Source: Macrostomum lignano (Eukaryota). Taken from it: DNA of 64,000 nt. A program made the position numbers and the translations under genes. Below, piece by piece: positions 13,501 through 64,000 of this stretch; positions within the stretch are counted from its first letter, which is position 1; each line of letters begins with the position of its first letter. The stretch lies in NCBI GenBank assembly GCA_002269645.1, contig NIVC01000767.1:175840-239839 (forward strand). Reading direction: 5' to 3'. The notes beneath the pieces were generated by a model. The model was not told the DNA's origin, searched no databases, and saw nothing but the letters and a program-made list of their open reading frames with translations.

Positions 13501-14114
13501 GCGGCCTGAGATTCAGTAGCGCCAGCCCGGACGAGCTGCTGGCCCACGCCAGGGCCGCTCATATTGGCGAGCGCGACTTAATGGACCGAAAAATCGCCCT
13601 GATGACTTTCATAACTGAATCAGCTGACAGTGCTACTGTCGGCAGTAGTGCCTGCCGATCATCTGTGTACCTCACCTGCCTGCTCTGCCCTACTCGGCTC
13701 CGATTCGCTAGCGACCTGCCGCCGCATCTCAACGCGGCGCATCGCCGGCCGTGTCCGCTGTGCCAGAAGCCCATCCTGCTGCCGGACGGTCAGGCCAGCA
13801 TGCGCCGGCATCTGCAGACTGTGTGCATCACCCGCTGCTCACTGTGCGACCGCTGTTTCCCTAGCGAAGCCCAGCTGCGCCGGCATCGCGACGCCGACCA
13901 TTCGACCACAACGCTGCCGCCGCCTGTCAAACGACGGCGTCGCTCGATTGTCGATTTTGGCGCCGCCGCGACGCAAACGCGCGACACCGGCGACGACCGT
14001 CTGCTGTTGTGCTTCACGTGTGGCGGCGAGTTCATCAGCTTGTCGGCGCTGAGGTCGCATCATTCGGAGTGCCGCCGGCGAGCAGCTGGCAGGTGTACAA
14101 ATGGAAACTTTTAA
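9000..14114 (+). CDS. Multi C2H2/C2HC zinc-finger protein (~10 fingers), 3 coding exons, one apparent frameshift
   Basis: Exons 9000-9508, 10517-11084 and 13228-~14092/14114, with phases 2 and 0 consistent. The splice at 11084/13228 completes the finger [13 protein letters not shown]|[10 protein letters not shown]. Other fingers include CANCGLC..HKTASGH, CAQCAD..HVALHGH, CAVCGR..HAAQTGH, CRVCGL..HARAAH and CSLCDR..HRDADH. A -1 frame change is needed near 13300. The 3' end is uncertain (possible donor at 14093). Confidence 0.8.
9629..10500. repeat. (GTCT)n microsatellite with recurring CTTAGT interruptions, zinc-finger intron 1
   Basis: Read directly. Confidence 0.97.
11100..13180. repeat. 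40-bp minisatellite GACACAATGATGCGGTCCAGTTTCAATCTAGCTAGCTACA, zinc-finger intron 2
   Basis: About 50 tandem units with a few variant second halves. Confidence 0.95.
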
Positions 14115-29800: not shown

Positions 29801-32800
29801 GAGGCTGGCTGAATAAATGACCGGAAGTGAGACTGGTTGAATAAATGACCGGAAGTGAGGCTGGCTGAATAAATGACTGGAAGTGAGACTGGATGAATAA
29901 ATGACCGGAAGTGAGGCTGGCTGAATAAATGACCGGAAGTGAGGCTGGCTGAATAAATGACCGGAAGTGAGGCTGGCTGAATAAATGACCGGAAGTGAGG
30001 CTGGCTGAATAAATGACCGGAAGTGAGACTGGTTGAATAAATGACCGGAAGTGAGGCTGGCTGAATAAATGACTGGAAGTGAGACTGGATGAATAAATGA
30101 CCGGAAGTGAGGCTGGCTGAATAAATGACCGGAAGTGAGGCTGGCTGAATAAATGACCGGAAGTGAGGCTGGCTGAATAAATGACCGGAAGTGAGGCTGG
30201 CTGAATAAATGACCGGAAGTGAGACTGGTTGAATAAATGACAGGAAGTGAGGCTGGCTGAATAAATGACTGGAAGTGAGACTGGATGAATAAATGACCGG
30301 AAGTGAGGCTGGCTGAATAAATGACCGGAAGTGAGGCTGGCTGAATAAATGACCGGAAGTGAGGCTGGCTGAATAAATGACTGGAAGTGAGATTGTCCGA
30401 ATAAATGACCGGAAGTGACAGTGGCTGAATAAATGACCGGGAGTGACTGGCTGAATAAATGACCGGAAGTGAGGCTGGCTGAATAAATGACCGGAAGTGA
30501 GGCTGGCTGAATAAATGACCGGAAGTGAGGCTGGCTGAATAAATGACCGGAAGTGAGACTGGCTGAATAAATGACCGGGAGTGACTGGCTGAATAAATGA
30601 CCTGAAGTGAGACTGGCTGAATAAATGACCTGAAGTGAGACTGGCTGAATAAATGACCTGAAGTGAGACTGGCTGAATAAATGACCGGGAGTGACTGGCT
30701 GAATAAATGACCTGAAGTGAGACTGGCTGAATAAATGACCTGAAGTGAGACTGGCTGAATAAATGACCGGGAGTGACTGGCTGAATAAATGACCTGAAGT
30801 GAGACTGGCTGAATAAATGACCTGAAGTGAGACTGGTTGAATAAATGACCGGAAGTGAGGCTGGCTGAATAAATGACTGGAAGTGAGACTGGATGAATAA
30901 ATGACCGGAAGTGAGGCTGGCTGAATAAATGACCTGAAGTGAGGCTGGCTGAATAAATGACCGGAAGTGAGACTGGCTGAATAAATGACCTGAAGTGAGA
31001 CTGGCTGAATAAATGACCGGAAGTGAGACTGGCTGAATAAATGACCGGGAGTGACTGGCTGAATAAATGACCTGAAGTGAGACTGGCTGAATAAATGACC
31101 GGGAGTGACTGGCTGAATAAATGACCGGAAGTGAGACTGTCCGAATAAATGACCGGAAGTGAGACTGTCTGAATAAATGACCGGAAGTGAGACTGTCTGA
31201 ATAAATGACCGGGAGTGACTGGCTGAATAAATGACCGGAAGTGAGACTGTCCGAATAAATGACCGGAAGTGAGACTGTCCGAATAAATGACCGGAAGTGG
31301 GCATCGCTAAGCCGAAATTTCAAGCCAGAAAACTCACTTGAAAATGCGAACTGCTAACAGATTTGGCAATCTGCTTAAACAGAGGCACCATGATTTTCTC
31401 GAACTGGCCGGGCTCCATCACGTCCATAATTTCTTCCATCTCGCCGAGGTACATCACCTCCTTGCTGCTGACTGTTCTAGGCCAGAATTTGAGCAGCCCG
31501 CGAACCACCTGCTCGGTGAGTGTGGCGTCTTTCTCAAGGAACTGCACAACGCAGTAGGCCAGCTGGGCGTGAAACATGCCGAGAGATTTGGCCTTGTGCA
31601 GCGGCAGCAGAACTTTCACTAGGAATTGCTTGTGCTCCGCCTTTAACGGCAGCGCAAATCCATTGATGATGCTGCCCAGAATCTCCAGCAATTCGCCGAC
31701 ACCATTGAACTGTTCGGTCTGGTAGATGAAGCGCAGGAAAATGTTATTAATCTGCTTGCGTATGAAAGCGCGCAAGCCAAGAAATTTGCCATAGATTCGA
31801 TGCAGGACAGTCTTCAGAAAATCGCGCTCGCGCGGATCTTCGCTGTCGAAGAGCTCGAGTAGCTGTATAAAAAATTAGTTTAAAAAATGAGTAAAATTCT
31901 CAGCATGCTACTTAGTTAACTACTGCACAGATTTTACACTAGAATAAAAATATGCTTTTAGAGTAGCTAGATGATGAAGCAGCAACGCCAGGTCGAGAAG
32001 CTGCAAACAATATGGATTGAAAACGTTTTGGCCGAAAAGCATGGACTTCTAAAGTTTTAGGTCTAGAATCTAGACTGGAAACCGCTAGTACAAAAAGCAA
32101 TGGACATGTAAAGTTCTAGCTCTAGACCCTAGATCAGAAACTGTTATCATAGAAACCATCGAGTTCTAAAGTCCTTGATCTAGAAATCTGGACTGGAAAT
32201 CGTCAGTACAAAAAAGCCATGGACATCGAAAGTTCCCAAATCTAGAATCTGGATCGGAAACTGTTGTCATAAAAACCATGGAGTTCAAAAGTTCTAGACC
32301 TAGAATCTACAGCAAAACTTTGATGTGCTCAACCTTGAGCTAACCCACTCCCGTGTCGCAACTGCTAATGCCTCCACAGACATATGCACACGTATTGTCC
32401 ATCAACTGAGCAGTGTCAGGAATAGACGTGCGGTTGAGGCAACGCCCTGAAGCCCTGCAGACTGCAGAGACAGACGGGAATAATAAAACAGCTCAATAGC
32501 GCGGAGTGAGAAGTGTACAAGGCCAAGTCAAGATTCTACATTATTCCCATCCGTGAGGATCACAGAATACTAACCCATGTTAATACTGCAACATCGCAGT
32601 AGAGGCCGGCGTACATGCAGCGATGGGAGAAATAAAAGCACCCTGGGGGAGGCAAGGCGGGAGACAGAAGAGTCCAGTCTCCAGGGCGCTCATTAAAGTA
32701 GTATATGCAGACAGGCGGACAGGCAAATGAGAGACGCGAAGAGGAATACCAGAAATCCAATTATCTCCTTTTCCTTCCTAACGAAAGAAATCCGTCCAAC

Positions 32801-48647: not shown

Positions 48648-51600
48648 ATGGAGCGAACTTCCGACTTAACTAGATTGTCAGGTGAGTGCCTGAGTGGCAA
48701 AAAGGCTTTGAATGAAAATCATTGACAGCAGCTGCAACAGCTATAACTTCTACCCTCCCTCAGCCCTCAGTTGGCAGCTATTCCCTCTTACCCTCCCTCA
48801 GCCCTCAGTTGGCAGCTATTCCCTCTTACCCTCCCTCAGCCCTCAGTTGGCAGCTATCCCCTCTTACCCTCCCTCAGTCCTCAGTTGGCAGCTAATCCCC
48901 TCTTACCCTCCCTCAGTCCTCAGTTGGCAGCTAATCCCCTCTTACCCTCCCTCAGCCCTCAGTTGGCAGCTAATCCCCTCTTACCCTCCCTCAGCCCTCA
49001 GTTGACAGCTAATCCCCTCTTACCCTCCCTCAGTCCTCAGTTGGCAGCTAATCCCCTCTTACCCTCCCTCAGCCCTCAGTTGGCAGCTAATCCCCTCTTA
49101 CCCTCCCTCAGCCCTCAGTTGGCAGCTAATCCCCTCTTACCCTCCCTCAGCCCTCAGTTGGCAGCTAATCCCCTCTATATTTTTACAGTCGAGCATCTGA
49201 ACTCGCACAAGTTCGCTTCGAATGGTCCGGATTGCAGGGGATGCCTCATCAGACGCGAGCAATGTCCCAAAACTGGGGAAGCTTTTTGTAAGTGTTAAAC
49301 TAATTATCTTTTAGCCTCACTTTCTGGATAAGAGATTGGAAGAGTCCTAAAACTTTCTGTCACGCACACTCATACACACGCTCACACAAGGTGTACGCTC
49401 GTACAGCGGCCCTTAGGCATGTACACTTTCTGTGCCTTCGGGGTTGGCCATCATGGCTGTATCTCACGACAAACCTCCGGCCAATTTTCGTTCACAAGCT
49501 CTGTCCCCCGAAACTATACTCGTAAGTGTCCATGTTGTTAACATCTCGATTTTATTGATCCAACTTTCAGACATGATTTACCACGCCATCCTTCGAGCCC
49601 ACCATCTGTTCCTGTTTTGTAACGAGAAAGCCGAATCTTGTCAGGGCGTCATCGACCTTCGACTACCAATGTGAGCGCGGGCCCCCCTGAACTGGCATCC
49701 ACTCAGATGAACTGGCACTCACTCAGATGAACCGGCACTCACTCAGATGAACTGGCACTCACTCAGATGAACCGGCACTCACTCAGATGAACTGGCACTC
49801 ACTCAGATAAACTGGCACCCACCCTAATAAACTGGCACCCACTTTAATAACTGGCACCCACTCTAATAAACTGGCAGCCACTCAGATAAACTGGCACCCA
49901 CTCTAATAAACTGGCAGCCACTCAGATGAACTGGCACCCACTCTAATAAACTGGCAGCCACTCAGATAAACTGGCACCCACTCTAATAAACTGGCAGCCA
50001 CTCAGATGAACTGGCACCCACTCTAATTAACTGGCAGCCACTCAGATAAACTGGCACCCACTCTAATAAACTGGCAGCCACTCAGATGAACTGGCACCCA
50101 CTCTAATAAACTGGCAGCCACTCAGATAAACTGGCACCCACTCTAATAAACTGGCAGCCACTCAGATGAACTGGCACCCACTCTAATAAACTGGCAGCCA
50201 CTCAGATAAACTGGCACCCACTGTAATTAACTGGCAGCCACTCAGATAAACTGGCACCCACTCTAATAAACTGGCAGCCACTCAGATAAACTGGCACCCA
50301 CTCTAATAAACTGGCAGCCACTCAGATAAACTGGCACCCACTCTAATAAACTGGCAGCCACTCAGATAAACTGGCACCCACTCTAATAAACTGGCAGCCA
50401 CTCAGATAAACTGGCATCCACTCTAATAAACTGGCAGCCACTCAGATAAACTGGCACCCACTCTAATAAACTGGCAGCCACTCAGATAAACTGGCACCCA
50501 CTCTAACAAACTGGCAGCCACTCAGATAAACTGGCACCCACTCTAATAAACTGGCAGCCACTCAGATAAACTGGCACCCACTCTAATAAACTGGCAGCCA
50601 CTTTGATAAACTGTCATCCACTCTAATAAACTGGCAGCCACTCAGATAAACTGGCACCCACTGTAGTTAACTGGCAGCCACTCAGATAAACTGGCACCCA
50701 CTCTAATAAACTGGCACCCAATCAGATAAACTGGCACCCAATCAGATAAACTGGCACCTACTCTAATAAACTGGCAGCCACTCAGATAAACTGGCACCCA
50801 CTGTAATTAACTGGCACCATCCCCCAAAAGACGCCCCCCCAATTAAAACCCCGGCCTCGCTAGTATAACAAATTATCTCGAACTCTCAAACTGTCAGCCG
50901 CGAATTCAAGCCGGACTCCAGCTGGCCTCACTGCGGCGAGTGCTTCGAGCTTGGCGCCGCCGCCGCCGACGCCGCCGACGCCTGGACGGTCGGCGTCCCG
51001 CTGTCCGGCGGCGGCCGCTGGCGAAGCCCGTTCAACGCCTACGCAAAGTCAGCCGTGTGCGGCCTGGAGGCACCTGGCGGCGAGGACGAATACGAGGACG
51101 GCGAGGAGGCCAACGAGGGAGGCGAGCTCGACGAGTTGCTGGCCTCGCTGCCCGAACGACCGGCGCCCGCAGTCACCGAGTCGGCGTCTGCCTCAGATTC
51201 GGGAAGTTTTTCGAGGTAGGCCTAGTTCAAGCAATAGCAGCTCATTCTGCTTGTCTATGGCCCAAACATCGTCATATACTACTATTTCACTACATACTAC
51301 TATTTCACTACATACTACTATTTCACTACATACTACTATTTCACTACATACTACTATTTCACTACATACTACTATTTCACTACATACTACTATTTCACTA
51401 CATACTACTATTTCACTACATACTACTATTTCACTACATACTACTATTCAACTAGATACTACTATTTAACAGCATACTACTATTCAACTAACATACTACT
51501 AATTGACTACATACTATTATTTCACTACACACAACTATTTCACTACATACAGCTATTTCACTACATACTACTATTTCACTACATACTACTATTTCACTAC

Positions 51601-54600
51601 ACACAACTATTTCACTACATACTACTATTTCACTACACACAACTATTTTACTACATACTACTATTTCATTACATACTACTATTTCACTACATACTACTAT
51701 TTAATTACATACTACTATTTAACTACATACTACTATTCAACTAGATACTACTATTTAACTGCATACTACTATTTAACTACATACTACTATTCAACTAGAT
51801 ACTACTATTTAACTAAGATACTACTAATTGACTACATACTATTATTATTTCACTAGACACAACTATTTCACTACATACTACTATTTAACTACATATTACT
51901 ATTTCACTACACACTACTATTTCACTACATACTACTATTTCACTACATACTACTATTTCACTACATACTACTATTTCACTACATACTACTATTTCAGCGG
52001 CAAGCCGCGACCTCCACCACCGCCTCGTCGGGGTTCGGTGCTCAGTGGAGGCCTCCCGGCGGCATCTTCCTCGTCGCCGTCGCCGACATTGCCGCTCGGC
52101 CAAACAACGACTCTGTCGCCGCCGCTGCCAACATCGTCAGCGCCGGCGACGAAAGAGAAGCCGCGCCCGCCAGTGAGGTCGACTACATCCGGGCAGCCGG
52201 CACGTCCTATTTCAACGGAGCCCGACAGGCCGCAGCTGCCGCCGAAACTGCCTCCTTCATCTACCGAAAGTCAGCTACCTCTGCCGCCGAAACTGCCTCC
52301 ATCATCTACCGAAAGTCAGCTACCTCTGCCGCCGAAACTGCCTCCATCATCTACCAAAACTCAGCCACCCTGCCGCCGAAACTGCCTCCATCATCTACCG
52401 AAAGTCAGCCACCGCTACCGCCGAAACTGCCTCCATCATCTACCAAAACTCAGCCACCTCTGCCGCCGAAACTGCCTCCATCATCTACCGAAAGTCAGCC
52501 ACCGCTACCGCCGAAACTGCCTCCATCATCTACCGAAACTCAGCCACCTCTGCCGCCGAAACTGCCTCCATCATCTACCGAAAGTCAGCTACCTCTGCCG
52601 CCGAAACTGCCTCCTTCATCTACCGAAACTCAGCCGTCATTGCCACCCAAACTGCCTCCATCATCTGCCACAAATAAGCCAATGCTGCCGCCGAAACTGC
52701 CTCCATCATCTACCGAAAGTCAGCTACCTCTGCCGCCGAAACTGCCTCCATCATCTACCAAAACTCAGCCACCCCTGCCGCCGAAACTGCCTCCATCATC
52801 TACCGAAAGTCAGCCACCGCTACCGCCGAAACTGCCTCCATCATCTACCGAAACTCAGCCACCTCTGCCGCCGAAACTGCCTCCATCATCTACTGAAACT
52901 CAGCCACCGCTACCGCCGAAACTGCCAGCATCAGCGAACCAGCTGCCTCTGCCACCGAAGCTGCTCGTTTGAGCCAGACAACCAGCCGCCGTTGCCGCCG
53001 AAACTGCCGAGCTTGCAGGTGAGTTTTCAGCCAACTCTGTTCGGCCTCCTGCACCACCCGAACGTGGCTCCATCAGACGTTCTGTGCGGCTACTATCGCA
53101 AGGGCTACTACCCCGGCAACGATGTTAAAGAGGCCAAGCGGTGAGTTGCGTTTGCGTAAGATGCGCGACTGTCGCTACTCTTGCGACTTAATGGCTACTC
53201 AATAGCTACTCAATATCTACTCAATAGCTACTCAATAGCTACTCAATGGCTACTCAATAGCTACTCGATAGCTACTCAATAGCTACTCAATATCTACTCA
53301 ATAGCTACTCAATAGCTACTCAATAGCTACTCAATAGCTACTCAATAGCTACTCAATAGCCACTCAATAGCTACTCAATAGCTACTCAATAGCTACTCAA
53401 TAGCTACTCAATAGCTACTCAATAGCCACTCAATATCTACTCAATAGCTACTCAATAGCTACTCAATAGCTACTCAATAGCTACTCAATAGCTACTCAAT
53501 GGCTACTCAATATCTACTCAATAGCTACTCAATAGCTACTCAATATCTACTCAATAGCCACTCAATATCTACTCAATAGCTACTCAATAGCTACTCAATA
53601 TCTACTCAATAGCTACTCAATAGCTACTCAATAGCTACTCGATAGCTACTCAATGGCTACTCAATAGCTACTCAATAGCTACTCAATAGCTACTCAATAG
53701 CTACTCAATAGCTACTCAATAGCTACCCAATAGCTACTCAATAGCTACTCAATAGCTACTCAATAGCTACTCAATAGCTACTCAATAGCTACTCAATAGC
53801 TACTCAATAGCTACTCAATAGCTACTCAATAGCTACTCAATAGCTACTCGATAGCTACTCAATGGATACTCAATAGCTACTCAATAGCCACTCAATATCT
53901 ACTCAATAGCCACTCAATAGCTACTCAATAGCTACTCGATAGCTACTCAATAGCTACTCAATAGCTCAAAACGCACCAACCCTGCGCAGTCTGATACGAC
54001 ACGCATCGGGCAACGGAGTTTACATGCTGCGCGGCTTCTGCCAGGGCCAACAGAGCCAGGAGCTGGCCGTCTGCCTTCGCCTCGACGATAAATCTTACAA
54101 ATTCAGCGTGGAAGCGACGACGTCCGGCAGCTGCCAGCAGTTCTGCATCGCCGGCGAGAGCGGCGGCAGGGCGCACGAGACCGTCGAAGCGATGCTGTTC
54201 TACCATCATCTGTTCCCCATCCTGACTGGCACTGGGATGTCCGATATGCGACTGGCGAGACCCTTTGACTTGGAGTGAGCTGGGCGATGCATGTTCTCAT
54301 GGATGATTTGTGTTCTCATGGGTGACTCGTGTTCTCATGGGTGGCTCGTGTTCTCATGGGTGGCTCGTGTTCTCATGGGTGGCTCGTGTTCTCATGGGTG
54401 ACTCGTGTTCTCATGGGTGACTCGTGTTCTCATGGGTGACTTGTGTTCTCATGGGTGACTTGTGTTCTCATGGGTGACTCGTGTTCTCATGGGTGACTCG
54501 TGTTCTAATGGATGACGCAAATTCTTATAATCCATTCGGTGGTTGTCCTTCTCAGTAGAGACCCTTCGGTTTCTGTATGGTCACTATGGAAGCATGCTGT

Positions 54601-57600
54601 TAATTACGAATAAAAAAATGAAACATGAGAAAATTTTGCTCATAAACAATCGCCAGGAAGGACGCAATTGTCAGCGGTTTGACCGCCGCCTTTTCGGCCA
54701 GCCTGTGGCACTACGGAGGCAAGGCCACCTGCACGAGTGAGTCATGGAGGCGGGCTGGGCTAGCAGCTGCGTGCTATTATTCAATTTAGACTACTGAGAA
54801 AAGTAGACAAGTAGAGATTTGAATAGTGAAATCTCTCACTAAGACGAAAAATGCCGCCATAAAAGAAATGACAGAATTACGAGAAGCGTCTGTGCACACC
54901 GATAGCGGTGAGAGAGAACGACGTGTGGGCTAGGGCTGACTGACGAAGGCGGAAAGCCAGAAACTGGTCTTGATCTGCCTGCGCAAGGTTCAAAACCCCA
55001 CTTTTAGGGTGTCACATGCTGGAATTATTAGCAGGGCGGATTAACACAACAGACTTTCGCACCAAAGAATCACACATTAACTCTGATGCGATGGCTCACA
55101 CTGGGTGTACAGCAGCCCTGACTTTCTAACCGTCAGGCATGTACAGTCTGTGTGCCGTGGGGGTTGGCCTTCATGGGTAGGGGAATCGCACCCCCCTTTG
55201 GACTTTGGACTTTGATACGAGTATCAAAAAAGTTGCAGTTCAATGCTATCAGTGCACTGTAGATTCCCGGTTATTCATTGAATCCTTTCAGCGTTCTCGT
55301 TGAAGCAGCCGACGGTACGTACGCCCTTCGAATGGACTCCTATGACACCACCGTGCTGTGCGTTGTACAAAATGGTCAAGTCATGAAATTTCGCATCGTT
55401 GTGACAGCCGGTCAGCCGGTAGCGACGAGGTTTGACTCGCTTGACTCATTTTTCTGGAACTTAAACTACGTCTTTAATACTCTACTGGCAGTAGTATCAG
55501 AATAATTTTTACCAGAAATAGACTTTAATACCATCAGCAGAAGGAAAAACATGCTATAGATTCGCAAAGTAGATTAGCAATCCATTTTATCCTGTAGTAT
55601 AATATTTGGGAATAGATTAGCAATCCATTCTATCCTGTAGTATAATAGGCGGGAATAGATTAGCAATCCATTCTATCCTGTAGTATAATAGGCGGGAATA
55701 GATTAGCAATCCATTTTATCCTGTAGGATAATAGGTGGGAATAGATTAGCAATCCACAAAACACCCACCCGTCCCACCGCACCGCAGCTGATATTCGCCA
55801 TCAACTTTCCGAATTCGAGCAAGTTCAGCAGCATCGAGGAGCTGCTGCTGCACTATCACAAGAATCCCCTGCCAACTAACTCGCTGGGTACATCGGATCT
55901 GCTGCTGCGGATTCCTTTTCAGTTGTCTACGTAAGAATGTTGACCATGATGTCAAGGGCCGCGCTGTACACACTGTGTGAGCGTTGTGTAATGAGAGCGA
56001 AATGGGCAGAATTGCCTCAGCGCCAGGGTCAGAAGCCTCCGAATATTTATTACTATATAAACCGCCTTCAGGAGATGCCAGCACGAACTCAGCCGCCTGG
56101 TCAGGCTGCCAGACGAGCAGGTGATTCGCAGCGGCACGGCTGATTCGGCTGCGGCGAAGTTGAGCCGACACGGCGGCGTCAAGCGCGGCGGTAATTTCTA
56201 CTTGCATCTGAACAAGGAGCGCAAGGGCGGAGGCGGAACCCTGCTAGCTATTGCTCCGGATGCGGCCAGCTCAGGGGAGGTGCACCGGTTGCGCCTGGTT
56301 ACCATGGAGACCGGATTTATCGGACAACCGCAGGTGATAATTTATTGATTGAGTAGTTCCCCTCGTGATCTAGTTACGGGCGAATTGCTGAGATGTCAAG
56401 GCTGAGGTCAGAAGCTACATGTAGTTTATTTAAAAACTTGTATTCGTCTACACATACTAGTATAGATATAAACACGTTTGAGTTATATGGTGAGAAGCTC
56501 AATGGCTTTCAGCTCAACGTGGGGCAAGTCAGTGGAATCCCAGTCTGTGGAATCCTGCAGTCTGTGGAATCCCAGTCTGTGGAATCCTGCAGTCTGTGGA
56601 ATCCTGCAGTCTGTGGAATCCTGCAGTCTGTGGAATCCTGCAGTCTGTGGAATCCTGCAGTCTGTGGAATCCTGCAGTCTGTGGAATCCTGCAGTCTGTG
56701 GAATCCTGCAGTCTGTGGAATCCTGCAGTCTGTGGAATCCTGCAGTCTGTGGAATCCTGCAGTCTGTGGAATCCTGCAGTCTGTGGAATCCTGCAGTCTG
56801 TGGAATCCTGCAGTCTGTGGAATCCTGCAGTCTGTGGAATCCTGCAGTCTGTGGAATCCTGCAGTCTGTGGAATCCTGCAGTCTGTGGAATCCTGCAGTC
56901 TGTGGAATCCTGCAGTCTGTGGAATCCTGCAGTCTGTGGAATCCTGCAGTCTGTGGAATCCTGCAGTCTGTGGAATCCTGCAGTCTGTGGAATCCTGCAG
57001 TCTGTGGAATCCTGCAGTCTGTGGAATCCTGCAGTCTGTGGAATCCTGCAGTCTGTGGAATCCTGCAGTCTGTGGAATCCTGCAGTCTGTGGAATCCTGC
57101 AGTCTGTGGAATCCTGCAGTCTGTGGAATCCTGCAGTCTGTGGAATCCTGCAGTCTGTGGAATCCTGCAGTCTGTGGAATCCTGCAGTCTGTGGAATCCT
57201 GCAGTCTGTGGAATCCTGCAGTCTGTGGAATCCTGCAGTCTGTGGAATCCTGCAGTCTGTGGAATCCTGCAGTCTGTGGAATCCTGCAGTCTGTGGAATC
57301 CTGCAGTCAGTAGAATCCCAGTCTGGAATGAAATCCCATGGAGCAAAAAATCCACACGTTGAGCCCCTTCCTCTCAGCATCACTGCCCCTCAGCCATTTC
57401 ATTTCAGACGGGGCGCCACTTTATTTCATAGGGGGCGCCTCTTTATTTCATAGGGGGGCGCCACTTTGTTTCAGAGGGGGGGGCGCCACTTCATTTCATA
57501 GGGGGGGGGCGCCTCTTCATTTCAAAAGGGGGCGCCTCTTCATTTCATAGGGGGCGCCAATTTATTTCAGAGGGGGGCGCCACTTTATTTCATAGGGGGC

Positions 57601-58118
57601 GCCACTTCATTTCATAGGGGGCGCCACTTCATTTCATAGGGGGCGCCACTTCATTTCATAGGGGGCGCCACTATATTTGAGAGGGGGCACCACTTCATTT
57701 CATAGGGGGGCGCCACTTCATTTCAGGGGGGCACCACTTCATTTCATAGGGGGCGCCACTTCATTTCAGGGGGGCACCACTTCATTTCAGTGGGGCGCCA
57801 CTTGATTTGATGGGCGTCATGTACTTTTACAGCCAGACGAGCATGCTCTCCTGTCTAAGCCCCATTTATGGCGTTCTGATCAATGACCTGAAATGACACA
57901 CTGGGTGGGATTACCTGTGGTTGAGGATATTAAAATCCCATAATTTAAAACTTTCTCAGTCACTGCCTGATATTTGAACCAAAATATGACAGAAATTCGT
58001 GCACGTTGAAGACAAACCGGAGCTGGCCGCCCTAAGCCTGGACAGACTTGTTCACATCCTGTGCGCCAATCCCAGCTGCCTGCCGCAAGGATTCCCACGA
58101 CTGTACATGAAACAGTGA
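48648..58118 (+). CDS. SH3BP2-like adaptor: PH domain, acidic Tyr motif, Pro-rich repeats and three SH2-like domains
   Basis: Proposed exons 48648-48681, 49189-49287, 49571-49670, 50898-51215, 51998-53140, 53990-54274, 54657-~54740, 55292-55418, 55788-55930, 56072-56333 and 57993-58118. PH: CRGCLIRR...YHAILRAHHLFLFCNEKAESCQGVIDL. SH2-1: GNGVYMLRG...MLFYHH. SH2-2: LWHYGG...DGTYALR...FSSIEELLLHYHKNPLP. SH2-3: GNFYLH...SLDRLVHIL. Frameshifts occur in the Pro-rich exon, and the 54740/55292 junction is uncertain. Confidence 0.72.
48755..49180. repeat. 39-bp minisatellite CCCTCAGTTGGCAGCTAATCCCCTCTTACCCTCCCTCAG, adaptor intron 1
   Basis: Tandem copies. Confidence 0.93.
49690..50818. repeat. 20-bp minisatellite with alternating AACTGGCACCCACTCTAATA / AACTGGCAGCCACTCAGATA units
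   Basis: Alternating dimeric higher-order structure. Confidence 0.94.
51275..51995. repeat. 18-bp minisatellite ATTTCACTACATACTACT
   Basis: Tandem copies running right up to the acceptor at 51996-51997. Confidence 0.94.
52235..52925 (+). repeat. Exonic 45-bp coding repeat (PPKLPPSSTE(S/T)Q(L/P)PL)n
   Basis: About 15 copies inside the adaptor Pro-rich exon. Confidence 0.9.
53190..53965. repeat. 11-bp minisatellite CTACTCAATAG
   Basis: Tandem copies. Confidence 0.95.
54290..54515. repeat. 19-bp minisatellite TGTTCTCATGGGTGACTCG
   Basis: Tandem copies. Confidence 0.92.
55570..55756. repeat. ~43-bp tandem repeat GAATAGATTAGCAATCCATTCTATCCTGTAGTATAATAGGCGG
   Basis: About 4 copies. Confidence 0.85.
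56530..57330. repeat. Highly homogeneous 17-bp minisatellite GTCTGTGGAATCCTGCA
   Basis: About 45 essentially identical units. Confidence 0.97.
57405..57810. repeat. ~22-bp minisatellite GGGGGCGCCACTTCATTTCATA
   Basis: Tandem copies. Confidence 0.9.
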
Positions 58119-58410: not shown

Positions 58411-60074
58411 GCATCGCTTTGCATCTCTCTCTGAATCTCTCTGCATTTCTCCCTGCATCTTTATCTGCATCTGTCCCTAGTTTCGAGTCCTTAATGTATT
58501 CGTTTGTCTCCCTCTAAAGATCTATCTGAAATTTCTCCGTGCATCTCTCCCCATGTCTTATTCAACGAGCGTACGACACTTAAAAAAAATCTTGCACGAA
58601 TTTCTTGCTGGTAAACCGCAGATTATACAAATAATTGATGTGTTCCTTATTACCCGACTTTTGGTAATCAAAGAACACTCACTTCTAGCTCAGTAGCTAG
58701 GCAACCAGTACGTCAACAGAAGGTATTCAATTACCTTGAGTCCTTAACTGAGAGCTCTCGTCAATACTCCTTGTTCGTTGATCTCGTTATCAGTAGCGTT
58801 CCTGTCCTTCAGGAATTCCGGGCGCCGGTCAACAGTTGATCTGGTCCGCTCTTGCAATTGTCTCCTTGACTTCTTGCCGGCCGGTTATCTGTAGTTCGGA
58901 CCAATCGGAAGCTTCCAAGTTAACAACGGGTACCCTGCGCCAAACTGCGGTTTAACATAAGCCTACTCCTTCTAGCAGTGCCTCTATGCACTCTAGGTAT
59001 AGCTCCGGAAACCACTGATAGTCTTCTAAGATCTATCAGGGGCAGTCCTTCTGGAGACTGCAACCAGTAGAGTCTAGACAGACTCAGGAGTCTCAACAGA
59101 CTCAAACTAAACTCCAACGAGACGTCTCAAAACACAGGCGTAAATGAGTAAGGCTTACCGCAAGAACTCGACGAGTCTTCTGTAGGAAGTCCTGTAGTGG
59201 CTTCCTTTTCGGAGCTCTTCTCCTTCCGGGGAATTGTTGGCTCTGAGTCCGTTCCGGACCACTTGCATTTATAGGCGTTCAGACCTCTCTCGAGGTCGTA
59301 CATCACTGTCTTCGCAAATGTCAAAGGGTCACGATTCGGTGGCTGTCAAGCATGACAGGGTAGAAAGTGCGCAACTAGTCGACTGTAAAAGCGCATGATT
59401 GGTTACCGTAGCTGGTAGACTTTGATTGGTTCATCCGGGTCAACCCGAGTGCAAACCAAATGATGACTTGAAGGTGGGGTTTGAATTGACAGTTGTTGGT
59501 CGCACGTGATTGGGTGATTTCTAAAATTAGCATGCTCGAGATTTCTCTCTTTCTATTGGTTAATTCGAATATATGTATGGTTCAGCGCATATCCTTATAC
59601 ATGCTCCTCAAATTACTACTATTTAAGTAGTACGTTAACAATTTTAAATCACTTTTCTGGGAGATATAATACTCTACCTACATAATATGCTAGTGAAAAT
59701 TTCTATTCAAGTGCCTTTCTGCTATTCAATTTCAACGATTCAGAATGATTTTTTATAAAGTTTTAACTGTTTTTCTGCGTTATCTAGCGTTATCTGCGTT
59801 ATCTAGATGTACTCCAGGTTTTTTCAGCTTGCGGCTGACTACTCGGCCAATGCTTAATTTATTCGCTTTGATAAAAATATCTTCACAAATATATGCAAGC
59901 GAAGGAACTGAAAATGCATAAGAGCAGTAATATTTAAACAGACAGAACTGTTACGAGCTAAATCTATGTATTTCCCATCTGTTAGACAGGGATATTTGAC
60001 AGAGAAGTGTCACCTGTGATTAGCACCTGTCGTTTCATAATAATAAATAATAATAACAATATTAATTGACAACA

Positions 60075-63000
60075 CCTACGATCGGAAGCGTCAGTTGCCG
60101 CCGAAGCTCCTGGTGCGGCTGGCTCCTCCCATGGCGGGACCTCTGCCCTTGTGGAAACTCCCACGGCCTCGGAGGGATCCAAAGCGGGGATTGCTGGCCA
60201 AACCACTAAGCCGAAGCGCACCTATGCGGCTATGGAAAAGAGGCAGTCGGCCCTGATTATCCCAGGCCAGGAGACGCCTCTTATGGCTGAACAGCTCGAC
60301 CTAATCTGGTGCGGGTTGGTCTCCCACCTGGTCAAGATGGCCTTGAGCGGTACCGTCATCCAAGTACTAAAGACGAAAGTCGAGGACCAAGCCCTTCACA
60401 TCCAGCCCGCCGAGCGCCGACAGCCAGTCTGAGCAGCTGCGTCGCCTGCTAGTGGCTACCAATCCGGAGCTGCGGGCCAATGGCGTCGTAGTTCACGAGA
60501 CCATCTTCGAGCCTGGCGGAGACGGTTTCACGGCTATTCTTGGACTGTCGGATAACTGGATGCTCCGCTATCCGACATGTCCCTCATCTCTGTCGGCTGA
60601 TACAGATTCAGATCTTCAGCTTTGAGTCTAACGCCACCCGCCCGCCGCCCCCAGAGAAGCGTAAGCGTGCGGGTGGGGCTCTGCCGGCGGAAAACGCCCA
60701 GGAAAAGAAGCTCTCGTTCGTCACGACCCCTCCGAGGACGTGGACCCTGTCAGAGGGAAAGCCGCGAAAACTGCAGCAACAGGCGGACGTGGAAAGGCTG
60801 GAAAACCCGCCCGGAACACTATCCGCTCTGGTCTGACTCAGCGCACGAAGCAGCTGCTGGACACTGCCAAGGTTCGCAACCGCAGCAACTCCCAGCCCAG
60901 TGTCACGAGTGTCATGACCGCATCATCCTACTTCAGGAGCCCTGGACGAAGAAAGCTAAGATTCCGAATATTCCTGCTGATTTTGACTGTTTTCAGACCC
61001 CTAAAACCCCAGAGCAGCCATATCGTGTCTACCCATCTCAAAGCTTGGCACAGACCGGACCTCTCTGACAGACCTCTGCGACATTCAACTCAAACCACAT
61101 AATCACCATCTCACGGTCATCATCGCCTCGATTTTATCCCTGGCGATGGCCCCGCAGTTCACCAACCTCACCTCCTCGTGGACTACTGCTCTAACCGCAG
61201 TTTGAGCTGCTGGTGGCGGGCGAACGTCAACGCGCCACCACACCTGGGGCAGCAATGTAGTGAGTTGCAAGTGTACTTGTATGCGCCAGTCGCTAGAGCG
61301 GGGTGGGGGTTGCTATTGTATCAGCATGTACGTGCTTTTCACCACCCCTGTCTCTATCTTTTATACCCAGTTTGATGTAACAATCGTTGTATCGTATTTA
61401 ACCTGCGTATCGATCTAATAAACGCCAAGAGGCTTCGTCAACTCTCAGTCGTATCTCTCTGCCTTAGTCTACAAGCAATACCTCCAGCAGCAGAGGCGAG
61501 TGTTGTGGCCGCTGGCTAAATAAATGAAGTCAATTCAGTTTGAGAGAAAAGAGAGGAGAGCTGAGGAGAGGTGCTCTCAGCTGTGGCTAGCATTCAATAT
61601 ATATTGTGCTGATAGATGTACATGTTTGCGAGTACATTAAGCATGCAAATTCACAACATCATCCCCCGTGCGAAAAGTGACAGAATACGGGTGGGACAAG
61701 CAGACGCAATAACGCAACCAATGTCAATGAACAATTTTCGGTGCATGAGCAGTCAGTCAGTCAGGTCAGTCAATCACGGGTCACAAGATTGAGAGTCTCG
61801 GGGGCCAATCGGAGCTCTCTTGGCGTTAATGGCGTTAATGAAGTCGTCAGCTTCCCGAACCAGGGAAGGGAGACTATCATTCTGCCAAAGCTTACCGCCC
61901 TATCAGTCTGACGCCTTTCTTCCTCAAACTGATGGAACGGCTGGTGCTCTGACACCTCCTCCTCGTGGACCTGAGGAACTCCCGCTCTCCCCCAACCAGC
62001 ACGCCTTGCGTCCTGGACGCTCCATCGAAAGTGCGCTGCATGATATTTTCGACAAGCTGGAGCGCGCCGTGCTCGGCAGTGGATACGCGCTCTCGCTTTC
62101 CTTGACATTGATGGAGCTTTCAATAATGTGCTTTTTGAAGTCTTTAGGCGGGCCCTGGAATCCCGGGGCACGCTAGAGCACCTTACCCGCTGGATCATGT
62201 ACATGGTCTCCAATCGTACTGCCACCTCGCACCTCCTGGGACACTCTCGCTCTGTAGAGGTCCAGAAAGGCGGACCGGACCGCAAAGTGGGAGTCCTCAG
62301 CCCGATTCCCTGGAACTTGGTCATGGACGAGCTGCTTCTCTGGAGCCCGTATCCGGAACCTGGTTCAAAAGGTCGGCTATTTGGATGATGTTACCGCCAC
62401 TGTGGCTGGACCATCACTCGCGGTTCTCAGAGACCTCCTCCAAGCCTTCATCCACCGTGCCGAGCGCTGGGCGCACAGCTGCGGTCTCGGGTTATCTGAG
62501 TCTGGTGGCTTATCATTTTCACCAGCTGCCGAAACTGGAGGATTGAACCACTCCCCCTCTATGGCAAACTCGTTGCCATGGAGAAACAAAACCAGATGTC
62601 TGGGCGTCACCCTCGACCACAGGTTGAGCTGGACCCCACACGTCCAAACCAAAGCCGCAAAGCTCTAGTGACTCGCGCGCAGATCTGCAGAGCTTTCGGC
62701 GCTACCTGGGGCCTCACCACACGCCGCCTCTGGTGGATTTACACTTCCATTGTGAGACCGGCCATCTCCTTCACCGGCTTCATCTGGAACAGTGCCCTAG
62801 AGGTGAAAGGGGTTCTCGTGCAAGGCCGCGCTTATCACAAACTATCATTAGTTTGATCATTATCCCTCTACGCCCTTTACTGACATAAACTCCTTCCTGA
62901 ACATTCCCCCTTGACCTCTTTGTCAGAAGAGAGGCAATGAAGACCACCGCCGTCTGAATGGTGTCATCATCCAGAAGCAGTTCGTTTTTAGAAAGCGGAA

Positions 63001-64000
63001 CCTCCGGCCGCACGGCGACCTCAGCCTGCGAGACCTGAAAGCAGCGGAAGGCCTGCTGACCCTCTCGGACGGAATCCCGTCCACGCTCTGCCCTCCGCTC
63101 AAATTAAAAACCAGAATTCCACCACTTCATGAAGCAAGTGACAAATTGAAACCCCATGATATCCACTGATTCACTGAACGGGTCCCAAATCCACCCCGCC
63201 TCTGGCTACGGCTACTGCATCGTGTCTGGAGGGAGAATCGTGGCGATCTTCTCTCAGCACCTGCTCCACCGGCTTCCAGAACGAAATTCTCGCCATCAGC
63301 TCCTGCGCCATGGAGCTGTATAAACATGCAGCGCGTCTGGGGGAAGGAGATTACCCTCCACTCGGACAGTCAAGCGGCGATCCACGCCCTTAAGCGCACC
63401 ATCACCTGCTCGCGTACAGTCCTCGACTGCATCGGGCAGCTCAACCGCTTAGGCGCCTCTAACAAGGTGTCAGTGGATCCCGGGCACTCGGGCCACCCAG
63501 CAAAGAGTTGCCAAGGCTGGCTCGACCGGTTCTTTTAAAGCTCCCCTGCCCGTGGCCCCCATCCCACCCCGTTTTTACCACTCGGATCAACCAGTGGGTG
63601 GCTTCTAAGCACAGGAAGAGGTGGGCTAACGCCCCCGACTGCCGGAAATCCTTGTCTTTCTTCCGCCTTGCGCAGGGCCATGCTTGGCCTCAACCACAGG
63701 GACATCAGGGCGGTGACCATGGCCCTCTGGGTCATGGCTGTTTTGCCAGGCATCACCGCCTCCAGGGAAAAAATCTGTAGTGAGGAATGCCCCTTCTGCA
63801 TCTCGGTGTCGAGAATGCGGAGCACTTCATATGGGAATGCCCCGCCTTTACTCAGGATAGGCTCACCTACCTCGGCCCAAACCCGGACCTCTGCGACATT
63901 TTCAGGCCGAGAATCTCTGCCAGCTCGTCAGCTACGAGCTACCTAAGGCTACCGGGCGAGCGACCATCCACCTCCTGGACTCTACGGAGGGGGACCGCGC
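60075..64000 (+). mobile_element. Decayed non-LTR retrotransposon with ORF1, APE, RT, RNase H and CCHC (Loa/R1-group-like)
   Basis: APE: LVDYC...NA..HTWGSN..RGE. RT: AKAYRPISL, PNQHALRPGRSIESALH, VLSPIPWNLVMDELL, YLDDVT. RNase H: LHSDSQAAIHAL...LDCIGQLNRLG..PGHSG. CCHC: CPFC...ENAEHFIWECP. Many stops and frameshifts; runs off the window end. Confidence 0.88.
61256..61473. mobile_element. Solo LTR (218 bp) inserted in the LINE endonuclease
   Basis: TGTAG...CTACA ends, 5-bp TSD AGCAA at 61251-61255 and 61474-61478, internal AATAAA. Confidence 0.85.

What the first reader, a model, noticed from the sequence alone, without database searches (positions are those of the whole stretch)
48648..58118. 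Adaptor protein with an SH3BP2-like N-half extended by three tandem SH2-like domains
Seen: the apparent stop after SH2-1 (TGA at 54276-54278) overlaps a GTGAGC donor at 54275. Its phase 2 fits the exon at 54657, which leads into LWHYGG and a second SH2. Phase-matched exons then lead to a third, divergent SH2 ending at 58118. Known: SH3BP2/3BP2 is PH-Pro-SH2 with one SH2; tandem SH2s normally come with a catalytic domain (Syk, SHP2, PLCgamma) or in p85. Inference: a non-catalytic PH + EDEYED + ~15x PPKLPP + SH2x3 scaffold is an architecture I do not recognise and may be a lineage-specific phosphotyrosine adaptor.
Basis: partly seen in the sequence, partly recalled or inferred. Interest (0 to 1): 0.72.

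Follow-up and report, generated by a model that had tools for sequence, protein, structure and literature searches.

The report
Flatworm adaptor gene with tandem SH2 domains
This is one Macrostomum lignano (flatworm) gene for a non-catalytic signalling adaptor with a long proline-rich repeat, two real SH2 domains in tandem and a conserved tail that may be a degenerate third SH2; the build is unusual and found only in this species, but the third domain and the SH3BP2 likeness are unproven.

Summary
The ATG is at 48648. The TGA at 54276-78 overlaps a GTGAGC donor, and joining 54274 to 54657 keeps the frame into LWHYGG. Junctions 55930/56072 and 56333/57993 are in phase, and the stop is at 58116-18.

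Two compensating shifts lie in the PPKLPP exon, so only 4 of about 17 units read PPKLPP literally. Exons 7 and 8 each lack one G, which puts the strong splice sites out of phase.

An exhaustive search found only M. lignano relatives. UniProt A0A1I8GWQ2 is a run-on model of this same locus from another copy. It has all four sites in frame and joins all three domains. Two diverged paralogues are collinear.

- **Domain 2** is a bona fide SH2: Pfam scores 30 bits in a paralogue.
- **Domain 1** is homologous to domain 2 (hhalign 96%, E 2e-9).
- **Domain 3** is conserved in a paralogue but only weakly SH2-like (hhalign 49%, P 2e-4). It lacks the FLVR arginine, and structure prediction failed.
- **PH and SH3BP2 likeness** has no significant support.

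Verdict: a real, lineage-restricted PH-like / proline-repeat / tandem-SH2 adaptor. The triple-SH2 claim is unresolved and no transcript data were available.

The parts
48648..48681 (+). Exon 1: putative start codon, MERTSDLTRLS. This is the least certain exon and is not used in the UniProt model.
   Evidence: It is the first ATG of its ORF. The donor is CAG|GTGAGT and the phase matches exon 2. It is absent from P0241.
49189..49287 (+). Exon 2: N-terminal part of the PH-like region (…CRGCLIRRE…).
   Evidence: The sites TTTTACAG| and |GTAAGT are phase-matched. P0241 matches this exon at 91%.
49571..49670 (+). Exon 3: PH-like beta2-beta4 (YHAILRAHHLFLFCNEKAESCQGVIDLR).
   Evidence: My own PH HMM aligns this stretch in register: 3.6 bits, reached by 3 of 2000 shuffles. 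hhalign against the SH3BP2 PH uses the same register, but P is 0.32.
50898..51215 (+). Exon 4: end of the PH-like region plus an acidic tract with a single tyrosine (GGEDEYEDGEE).
   Evidence: Translation. 99% identical to P0241.
51998..53140 (+). Exon 5: PPPPPRRG, then a Ser/Pro-rich stretch, then about 17 units of KLPPSST(E/K)(S/T)Q(P/L)PLPP, then the start of SH2-1 (YYPGNDVKEAKR). It holds the two compensating 1-nt shifts (a C-run at about 52365 and a T-run at about 52965).
   Evidence: Differences between repeat units are synonymous in 15 of 31 cases in the PPKLPP frame, against 7 of 31 and 4 of 31 in the other two frames. P0241 reads PPKLPP in frame throughout, with 'PPKLLVEPDNQPP'.
53990..54274 (+). 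Exon 6: core of SH2-1 (GVYMLRGFC … EAMLFYHHLFPI … RPFDLE).
   Evidence: My own SH2 HMM gives 22.6 bits, reached by 0 of 2000 shuffles. hhalign of the SH2-1 family against the SH2-2 family gives probability 96%, E 2.3e-9. About half of the weak PDB profile hits are SH2 domains (ABL, NCK1, BLNK).
54275..54656 (+). Intron 6: GTGAGC donor overlapping TGA 54276-78, a 19-nt minisatellite (54292-54516), AATAAA at 54609, and the acceptor CGCCAG|.
   Evidence: Both P0241 and paralogue P0243 read straight across this junction (…DLE|KDAIV… and …DLE|PRPDN…).
54657..54736 (+). Exon 7: linker plus betaA of SH2-2 (KDAIVSGLTAAFSASLWHYGGKATCT). It has no in-frame ATG. It is one G short compared with the UniProt copy.
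   Evidence: P0241 reads 'KATCTDVLVEA', which needs ACGGA|GTGAGT. SLWH(Y/H)G is conserved in paralogue P0243.
55292..55429 (+). Exon 8: SH2-2 alphaA-betaD (VLVEAADGTYALRMD…VMKFRIVV…). It is one G short compared with the UniProt copy (CCGG[G]TAGCGACGAG|GTTTGA).
   Evidence: Pfam SH2 gives E 0.005, 17.4 bits in the window copy and 30.3 bits, above the cut-off of 21, in paralogue P0243. All four weak PDB hits are SH2 domains. My own HMM gives 36.4 bits. P0241 reads 'TAGQPGSDELIFAINF'.
55788..55930 (+). Exon 9: SH2-2 betaE-betaG (LIFAINFPNSSKFSSIEELLLHYHKNPLP…IPFQLST). A TAA overlaps the GTAAGA donor.
56072..56333 (+). Exon 10: N-terminal part of the third domain (…GGNFYLHLNKE…TLLAIAPD…EVHRLRLVTMETG…). 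It has His where SH2 domains carry the FLVR arginine.
   Evidence: In phase with exon 9. 28% identical and collinear with the third domain of paralogues P0242 and P0246. The SH2 signal is weak.
57993..58118 (+). Exon 11: C-terminal part of the third domain (KFVHVEDKPELAALSLDRLVHILCANP…RLYMKQ) and the TGA stop.
   Evidence: Phase 0 matches exon 10. The C-terminus coincides with that of paralogues P0242 and P0246 (…LLVKP).

Best explanation
The region 48648-58118 is one 11-exon protein-coding gene of the flatworm Macrostomum lignano. It encodes a non-catalytic adaptor of about 909 residues.

**Order of parts**
1. A weakly PH-like N-terminus.
2. An acidic EDEYED tyrosine site.
3. PPPPPRRG and about 17 tandem PPLPPK units, which match the class II SH3 (PxxPxK) and PPLP-type WW ligand motifs.
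4. Two true SH2 domains in tandem that arose by internal duplication. Both keep the FLVR arginine.
5. A conserved C-terminal domain that is probably a strongly degenerate SH2 without the phosphotyrosine-binding arginine.

**Inferred mechanism**
- The SH2 pair docks on phosphotyrosine sites, perhaps on doubly phosphorylated motifs as in Syk, ZAP-70 or SHP-2.
- The multivalent proline repeat recruits many SH3 or WW proteins.
- The tail acts as a structural or regulatory module rather than a phosphotyrosine reader.

**The 'stop' after SH2-1** is only the start of a phase-2 intron.

**The four frame anomalies** in this window are 1-nt homopolymer differences from another copy of the locus. They are most likely long-read assembly errors.

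**Shown versus inferred**
- Shown: the exon structure, the identity of SH2-1 and SH2-2, the collinear paralogues, and the restriction to this lineage.
- Inferred: the binding functions, the fold of the third domain, the PH identity, and that the indels are errors.
For: **Gene structure**
- All ten introns have GT donors and CAG acceptors. Eight junctions are in phase as assembled.
- Exon 7 has no ATG in the frame that encodes SLWHYGG.
- The M. lignano spliced leader ends in ATG (PMC8629364). Joined at 54657 it would give the wrong frame.

**Support from related proteins**
- An exhaustive phmmer search with exon 6 found A0A1I8GWQ2 (P0241, E 3e-59). It maps collinearly on the window from 31390 to 63909.
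- P0241 contains …RPFDLEKDAIVSGL…, …KATCTDVLVEA…, …TAGQPGSDELIFAINF…, in-frame PPKLPP units, and all three domains up to RLYMKQ.
- Paralogue P0243 (35% identity) reads SH2-1, linker and SH2-2 in one ORF.
- Paralogue P0242 (41% identity) carries SH2-2 and the third domain and ends at the same position as this gene.

**Domain identity**
- SH2-2: Pfam 30.3 bits, above the cut-off, in P0243. In the window copy E is 0.005. The weak PDB hits are all SH2.
- SH2-1: hhalign against the SH2-2 family gives 96%, E 2e-9. My own SH2 HMM gives 22.6 bits, reached by 0 of 2000 shuffles.
- A profile of the three domains hits dozens of SH2 chains in the PDB at E 5e-4 to 0.013.
- Third domain: the paralogue scores 9.7 bits against my SH2 HMM, reached by 0 of 2000 shuffles. 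hhalign against canonical SH2 domains gives P 1.8e-4, probability 49%.

**Repeat frame**
- Variation between repeat units is mostly synonymous only in the PPKLPP frame.

**Assembly background**
- M. lignano assemblies are PacBio-based, about 15% tandem repeats, with 180 Mb of duplicated blocks at least 95% identical (PMC5730564).
Against: - No transcript evidence could be reached. Every supporting protein is itself a gene prediction from the same species.
- P0241 is a run-on model through several genes.
- P0242 and P0246 skip the exon 7 equivalent.
- AATAAA occurs at 54609 in intron 6, and none occurs within 1 kb after the final stop.
- In the window as assembled the reading frame is broken at two junctions unless weak donors are used (GTCATG at 54741, GTAGCG at 55419).
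- The third domain gives no Pfam hit at E up to 1 and no SH2 hit in the PDB searches. It shows no similarity to the SH2-2 family (P 0.34).
- Structure models were unusable, with pLDDT 40-42.
- The PH region has no Pfam or PDB support.
- SH2-2 has Asp at betaB7. A paper on Legionella SH2 domains links that residue to loss of phosphotyrosine binding (PMC6208348).
Confidence: 0.7

Rival explanations
1. Two genes in an operon-like pair. Gene A (PH-like, proline repeat, SH2-1) ends at TGA 54276 and is polyadenylated after AATAAA at 54609. Gene B (SH2-2 plus the tail) is SL trans-spliced at the 54656 acceptor.
For: - AATAAA at 54609 is the only canonical signal in the two stretches scanned for one (intron 6 and the kilobase after the final stop).
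- The spacing is 378 nt, of which 225 nt is minisatellite. That fits the operon spacing in M. lignano, where about 30% of genes are trans-spliced and 15% lie in operons (PMC8629364).
- In the literal window sequence, SL-ATG plus exon 7 in frame 0 plus the strong donor at 54737 happens to be in phase with exon 8 (my reading).
Against: - That frame would translate exon 7 as EGRNCQRFDRRLFGQPVALRRQGHLH. It would lose SLWHYGG, the betaA motif of SH2-2, which is conserved in paralogue P0243 as SLWHHG.
- The conserved frame has no ATG, and no AG other than 54655-56 lies downstream of its last stop.
- P0241 and P0243 read through the junction.
Confidence: 0.12
2. The copy in this window is a decaying duplicate, that is, a young pseudogene. 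The four 1-nt indels are real, and the intact gene is the copy behind A0A1I8GWQ2.
For: - Four frame-disturbing differences lie in 2.7 kb of CDS. There are also four amino-acid differences and a different repeat number compared with P0241.
- The sequenced DV1 line carries extra chromosomes and 180 Mb of blocks at least 95% identical (PMC5730564), so redundant copies under relaxed selection are expected.
Against: - All four differences are length changes of homopolymer runs (C4 to C3, T2 to T3, G2 to G1, G3 to G2). That is the typical error of PacBio-based assemblies.
- The two in exon 5 compensate each other exactly.
- There are no in-frame stops or larger lesions in any exon.
Confidence: 0.3
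3. The C-terminal region (exons 10-11) is not an SH2 fold. It is a lineage-specific domain of another kind, and the protein is a PH-like / proline-repeat / tandem-SH2 adaptor with an unrelated tail.
For: - No Pfam match at E up to 1 and no SH2 match in the PDB searches, either alone or as a family profile.
- hhalign against the protein's own SH2-2 family gives P 0.34.
- The FLVR arginine is missing both in this gene (His) and in the paralogue.
- The only profile match covers a 22-column hairpin.
Against: - The order of predicted elements and the motifs fit an SH2: helix, GNF(Y/L)(L/V), a betaC-betaD hairpin (V.R.R.V), then L..(L/M)VH.L.
- The paralogue's domain beats all 2000 shuffles against my SH2 HMM.
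- Adding this region to the three-domain profile accompanied a higher score for PDB SH2 domains (13 to 23 bits for APS). SH2-1 was added at the same time, so the separate contribution of the third region was not measured.
Confidence: 0.45

Closest known systems
SH3BP2 (3BP2)
   Same: The order of parts looks alike: an N-terminal PH(-like) region, an acidic tyrosine tract (EDEYED here, EDYEHDDEDD in SH3BP2), SF.S..P…PPPPP(K/R)RG, a long proline-rich SH3-binding region, then an SH2. Both lack a catalytic domain.
   Different: There is no significant sequence similarity (BLASTP E 2.3; hhalign probability 2.5% and P 0.32). SH2-1 is not closest to the SH3BP2 SH2. This protein has two SH2 domains plus a tail instead of one SH2. 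It has about 17 exact tandem PPLPPK units. No orthology can be claimed.
Tandem-SH2 modules of Syk/ZAP-70, SHP-1/2, PLC-gamma, p85 and RasGAP
   Same: Two SH2 domains follow each other closely, with about 20 residues between domain ends. Both keep the betaB5 arginine, so bidentate reading of paired phosphotyrosines is plausible.
   Different: No kinase, phosphatase, lipase, GAP or p110-binding part was detected (Pfam). The two SH2 domains are each other's closest relatives, so they are not orthologues of any of these pairs.
PH-SH2 adaptors (SH2B/APS/LNK, STAP/BRDG1, DAPP1)
   Same: All are non-catalytic docking proteins that combine a PH-type region with an SH2. APS and DAPP1 are among the best single matches of SH2-2.
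   Different: Those proteins have one SH2 and no long tandem proline repeat. The PH identity is unproven here.
Non-canonical SH2 domains (second SH2 of Spt6, the JAK SH2-like domain)
   Same: They are a model for the tail: an SH2-derived fold that has lost the phosphotyrosine-binding arginine and serves a structural role next to another domain. This comparison comes from my own knowledge.
   Different: Those folds are solved structures. Here the fold is only a hypothesis.

Membership tests
SH2 domain (Pfam PF00017): second domain | Profile match at or above Pfam's gathering score. | tested here: met
   The window copy scores 17.4 bits, below the cut-off of 21 (E 0.005). The homologous domain of paralogue P0243 scores 30.3 bits. 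All four PDB phmmer hits are SH2.
SH2 domain (Pfam PF00017): first domain | Significant homology to an established SH2. | tested here: met
   No Pfam hit. hhalign against the SH2-2 family gives probability 96%, E 2.3e-9 over 87 columns. My own SH2 HMM gives 22.6 bits, reached by 0 of 2000 shuffles.
SH2 domain: first and second domains | Arginine at betaB5 of the FLVR motif. | tested here: met
   YMLRG and YALRM are invariant in all paralogues. Note that betaB7 is Phe in SH2-1 and Asp in SH2-2.
SH2 domain: third region | Significant profile match to SH2. | tested here: inconclusive
   Pfam and PDB give no match. My own HMM gives 1.3-2.9 bits, reached by 7-56 of 2000 shuffles. The paralogue gives 9.7 bits, reached by 0 of 2000. 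hhalign gives P 1.8e-4, probability 49%, over a hairpin only. hhalign against the SH2-2 family gives P 0.34.
SH2 domain: third region | Arginine at betaB5. | tested here: not met
   GNFYLHLNK has His at that position. The paralogue GNFLVLRRS has Leu there, with Arg one residue later.
SH2 domain: third region | The SH2 fold (alphaA, central sheet, alphaB). | not testable with these tools
Exon 10 alone gave pLDDT 42. Paralogue P0242 with a 5-row alignment gave pLDDT 40.
SH3BP2 family | Sequence homology to SH3BP2 across the PH and SH2 domains. | tested here: not met
   BLASTP gives E 2.3. hhalign against 13 SH3BP2 proteins gives probability 2.5%, and only in a low-complexity stretch. The PH region gives P 0.32. 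SH2-1 against the SH3BP2 SH2 gives -0.4 bits.
SH3BP2 family | The architecture PH, proline-rich region, single C-terminal SH2. | tested here: not met
   A proline-rich region and an SH2 are present, but they are followed by a second SH2 and a conserved tail.
PH domain (PF00169) | Profile match. | tested here: inconclusive
   No Pfam or PDB match. My own PH HMM gives 3.6 bits, reached by 3 of 2000 shuffles, for beta2-beta4 only. By eye, the stretch between beta6 and the C-terminal Trp is about 12 residues too short.
Tandem-SH2 enzymes and regulators (Syk, SHP, PLC-gamma, p85, RasGAP) | A catalytic domain or a domain that binds the catalytic subunit. | tested here: not met
   Pfam found no other domain in the 906-residue model.

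The most novel reading that the evidence does not exclude
Macrostomum flatworms have evolved a private family of non-catalytic scaffolds. One polypeptide carries three SH2-fold domains in a row: two phosphotyrosine readers and one arginine-less pseudo-SH2. Ahead of them lie about 17-22 identical SH3/WW-binding proline motifs. No such architecture is described in any animal. It would be a highly multivalent hub, and possibly condensate-forming, for phosphotyrosine signalling.
Probability: 0.4. Interest if true: 0.55.

Novelty: new variant of a known kind. Interest (0 to 1): 0.45.

Why it matters
SH2 adaptors are the wiring of phosphotyrosine signalling, and their domain combinations are thought to be largely fixed across animals. 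If confirmed, this protein would be a lineage-specific rearrangement of that toolkit, combining:
- a tandem SH2 pair without an enzyme;
- an extreme tandem array of SH3/WW ligand motifs;
- a possible pseudo-SH2.

M. lignano has RNAi and transgenesis, so the function could be tested directly.

There is also a practical lesson. In this genome, ORF-level 'stops' at phase-2 introns and homopolymer indels make adaptor genes look truncated or broken. The existing UniProt model of this locus is a run-on through neighbouring genes.

Tried and rejected
**Searches and models that gave nothing useful**
- The word-indexed search with the spliced 382-residue C-terminal half found nothing. The relatives came only from the exhaustive search with exon 6.
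I kept to exact window translations and database proteins.
- AlphaFold2 on exon 10 alone, and on paralogue P0242 with a 5-row alignment, gave pLDDT 42 and 40. I did not run fold searches on these models because they would be meaningless.
- Rfam found nothing in the window.
- The search with human SH3BP2 as bait returned only mammalian orthologues among the 120 listed, too narrow a set for a sensitive profile.
- The B56 exon did not identify the organism: the best hit was 85%, to an unnamed Logan contig.

**Alignments and hits I discarded**
- MAFFT misaligned SH2-1 with the third domain, so I did not use that alignment.
- The TAL-effector top hits of the three-domain profile sum many sub-threshold repeat matches.
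- P0244 and P0245 are unrelated repeat proteins.

**Readings I rejected**
- The literal Cys/His-rich reading of the repeat (CRRNCLHHLPKVSH, about 12 times) as a real zinc-binding-like repeat. Substitution patterns favour the PPKLPP frame, and the other copy is in frame.
- An alternative last exon at 57833 or 57837. It is in phase but has no similarity to the paralogues or to SH2 domains.
- Extending the gene beyond 58118 through the GTGAAC donor, as the UniProt model does. That runs into retroelement-like ORFs, and paralogues P0242 and P0246 end at the same position as this gene.


Full report
**What is in the sequence**

The window is eukaryotic and full of minisatellites: TRF returns 48 rows at score 300 or more. 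Between 48648 and 58118 on the + strand I could chain eleven exons. Every donor starts GT and every acceptor ends CAG.
- The ATG is at 48648.
- TGA 54276-78 overlaps the GTGAGC donor at 54275, which is phase 2.
- The acceptor at 54656/54657 rebuilds the same GAG codon and continues as KDAIVSGLTAAFSASLWHYGG.
- Junctions 55930/56072 and 56333/57993 are in phase.
- The stop is at 58116-18.

The stop over the donor is not remarkable. A phase-2 intron with a GTRAG donor always reads as TGA, TAA or TAG. Exons 3, 4, 5 and 9 of this gene end in the same way.

The sequence as assembled does not give a clean reading frame.
- In the 45-nt repeat, unit 4 has 44 nt (CCCC reduced to CCC at about 52365). The unit at 52958 has 43 nt (CGTTTGAG).
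- Between these two sites the open frame reads CRRNCLHHLPKVSH about 12 times instead of PPKLPP.
- Among the units downstream of the first shift, 15 of 31 differences from the consensus are synonymous in the PPKLPP frame. In the other two frames the counts are 7 of 31 and 4 of 31. Selection has therefore acted on PPKLPP.
- The strong donor of exon 7 (CGA|GTGAGT) is phase 1, but the strong acceptor at 55292 needs phase 2.
- The donor of exon 8 (GAG|GTTTGA) is phase 2, but exon 9 needs phase 0.
- With the strongest sites the CDS is 2728 nt, which is 1 mod 3.
- A literal open frame exists only with the weak donors GTCATG (54741) and GTAGCG (55419).

**Relatives**

The word-indexed search with the spliced C-terminal half found nothing. 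An exhaustive phmmer search of exon 6 (the SH2-1 core, an exact window translation) against 1.84 billion representative proteins found five hits. Three are real and all are Macrostomum lignano proteins named 'SH2 domain-containing protein'.
- P0241 is UniProt A0A1I8GWQ2.
- P0242 is A0A1I8GQE0, with cluster member P0246.
- P0243 is A0A1I8G3B9, with cluster member P0247.

The window is therefore M. lignano (Platyhelminthes, Macrostomorpha).

P0241 (2139 residues) maps collinearly on the window from 31390 to 63909. It begins in an ORF antisense to the B56 gene and ends in retroelement ORFs. It is a run-on prediction of this same locus from another copy or assembly. Inside it the adaptor is intact.
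- PPKLPP is in frame throughout, with '…PPKLLVEPDNQPP…'.
- It reads '…RPFDLEKDAIVSGL…' across intron 6.
- It reads '…KATCTDVLVEA…', which requires ACGGA|GTGAGT, one more G than the window has.
- It reads '…TAGQPGSDELIFAINF…', which requires CCGGGTAGCGACGAG|GTTTGA, again one more G.

With these two G residues the strong splice sites are all in phase and the CDS is 2730 nt. All four anomalies are thus single-base differences in homopolymer runs. M. lignano assemblies are PacBio-based, about 15% tandem repeat, and contain 180 Mb of blocks at least 95% identical (PMC5730564). Both assembly error and a slightly decayed duplicate are possible. I favour error.

**One gene or two?**

M. lignano trans-splices about 30% of its genes and has operons with short spacers. 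Its spliced leader ends in ATG (PMC8629364). AATAAA lies at 54609 in intron 6, and none lies within 1 kb after the final stop. An operon reading therefore deserved a test.

It fails on the reading frame.
- SL-ATG joined at 54657 gives the frame EGRNCQ…, not the frame that encodes SLWHYGG.
- The SLWHYGG frame has no ATG, and no other AG lies after its last upstream stop.
- Yet it is the frame conserved in the 35%-identical paralogue P0243 (…DLEPRPDNRKLTDLLRTSLWHHG…).
- Exon 7 must therefore be entered from an upstream exon in phase 2, and the donor at 54275 provides this.

Paralogue P0243 reads SH2-1, linker and SH2-2 in one ORF. P0242 and P0246 carry SH2-2 and the third domain and end where this gene ends. 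All of these are predictions, not transcripts, so a short isoform that ends after SH2-1 cannot be excluded.

**Domains**

*Second domain.* This is an SH2.
- Pfam gives E 0.005 in the window copy and 30.3 bits, above the cut-off, in P0243.
- All four PDB hits are SH2 domains.

*First domain.* This has no Pfam or PDB hit on its own.
- Its family profile matches the second-domain family with hhalign probability 96%, E 2.3e-9.
None of 2000 shuffles reached that score.
- Both the first and second domains keep the FLVR arginine.
- betaB7 is Phe in the first domain and Asp in the second. Asp at this position was linked to loss of phosphotyrosine binding in a Legionella SH2 (PMC6208348).

*Third region.* This is 28% identical and collinear with the tail of P0242, so it is a conserved domain.
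- It has no Pfam match at E up to 1 and no SH2 match in the PDB, alone or as a profile.
- It shows no similarity to the SH2-2 family (P 0.34).
- It has weak, in-register SH2 signals. This gene scores 1.3-2.9 bits, reached by 7-56 of 2000 shuffles.
- The paralogue scores 9.7 bits, reached by 0 of 2000 shuffles.
- hhalign against canonical SH2 domains gives P 1.8e-4, probability 49%, for the betaC-betaD hairpin only.
- The FLVR arginine is replaced by His. All but three human SH2 domains keep this arginine (PMC12470777).
- Structure prediction could not decide.

*N-terminus.* This is at best PH-like.
- There is no Pfam or PDB match.
- My own PH HMM gives 3.6 bits, reached by 3 of 2000 shuffles, for beta2-beta4 only.

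*SH3BP2.* I used the human sequence, recalled from memory, as bait. It was 97% identical to a macaque SH3BP2 isoform, and I used 13 of the database proteins it retrieved as the reference. There is no significant similarity to SH3BP2. Only the order of parts looks alike.

**How it probably works (inference)**

- The SH2 pair reads phosphotyrosine, possibly paired sites.
- The PPLPPK units fit the class II SH3 consensus PxxPxK and the PPLP WW-ligand motif (from my own knowledge). There are about 17 here and about 22 in the other copy, which gives very high valency.
- EDEYED is a plausible tyrosine phosphorylation site.
- The tail is a structural or regulatory module.

**Novelty**

The protein exists in UniProt only as an automatically named, wrongly extended model. 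No paper in the library mentions a triple SH2 or this protein. No homologue outside M. lignano reached E 0.001. I rate it a new variant of a known kind (an SH2 adaptor). Interest is moderate. It would be higher if the third SH2 and the single transcript are confirmed.

Noticed in passing
window 48682-57992 (all ten introns) and the whole window: Nine of the gene's ten introns (all but intron 2) carry their own private minisatellite, with units of 39, 40, 18, 11, 19, 43, 17 and 22 nt. The window as a whole gives 48 TRF rows at score 300 or more. This fits the reported figure of about 15% tandem repeats in M. lignano.
   Followed up: partly
window 31390-63909 versus UniProt A0A1I8GWQ2 (P0241): The public 2139-residue model is a chimaera. 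It starts in an ORF antisense to the PP2A-B56 gene, runs through the adaptor, skips its stop through a GTGAAC donor at 58115, and ends in retroelement-like ORFs (an Exo_endo_phos_2 trace). Its residues 43-645 have no match in the window.
   Followed up: partly
window 52379-52965: The shifted frame of the proline repeat stays open and would encode about 12 units of CRRNCLHHLPKVSH, a Cys/His-rich repeat. I judged this an artefact of two compensating 1-nt indels, but the open frame is striking.
   Followed up: yes
window 4089-7488 (+): Exons of a golgin-84 (GOLGA5) homologue. Pfam Golgin_A5 gives E 2e-25 for the C-terminal transmembrane exon and E 2e-9 for a coiled-coil exon. More coiled-coil ORFs lie from about 1100.
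   Followed up: partly
window 31323-31874 (-): A large exon of a PP2A regulatory subunit B56 gene (Pfam B56, E 5e-90). The best database match is only 85% identical (an unnamed Logan contig from run SRR26915109), and the Bugula neritina protein is 81% identical.
   Followed up: partly
window 13158-14111 (+): A 318-residue open frame with C2H2 zinc-finger matches (zf-C2H2_4, E 2e-6).
   Followed up: no
window 60070-64000: Overlapping ORFs on both strands that look like a non-LTR retroelement (endonuclease and reverse-transcriptase-like text). Pfam gave no hit at E up to 0.01 for the four ORFs tested.
   Followed up: partly
window 54609: The only canonical AATAAA found in the two stretches scanned for one lies in intron 6, 45 nt before the exon 7 acceptor. 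No AATAAA or ATTAAA lies within 1 kb after the final stop. A short isoform ending after SH2-1 is therefore conceivable.
   Followed up: partly
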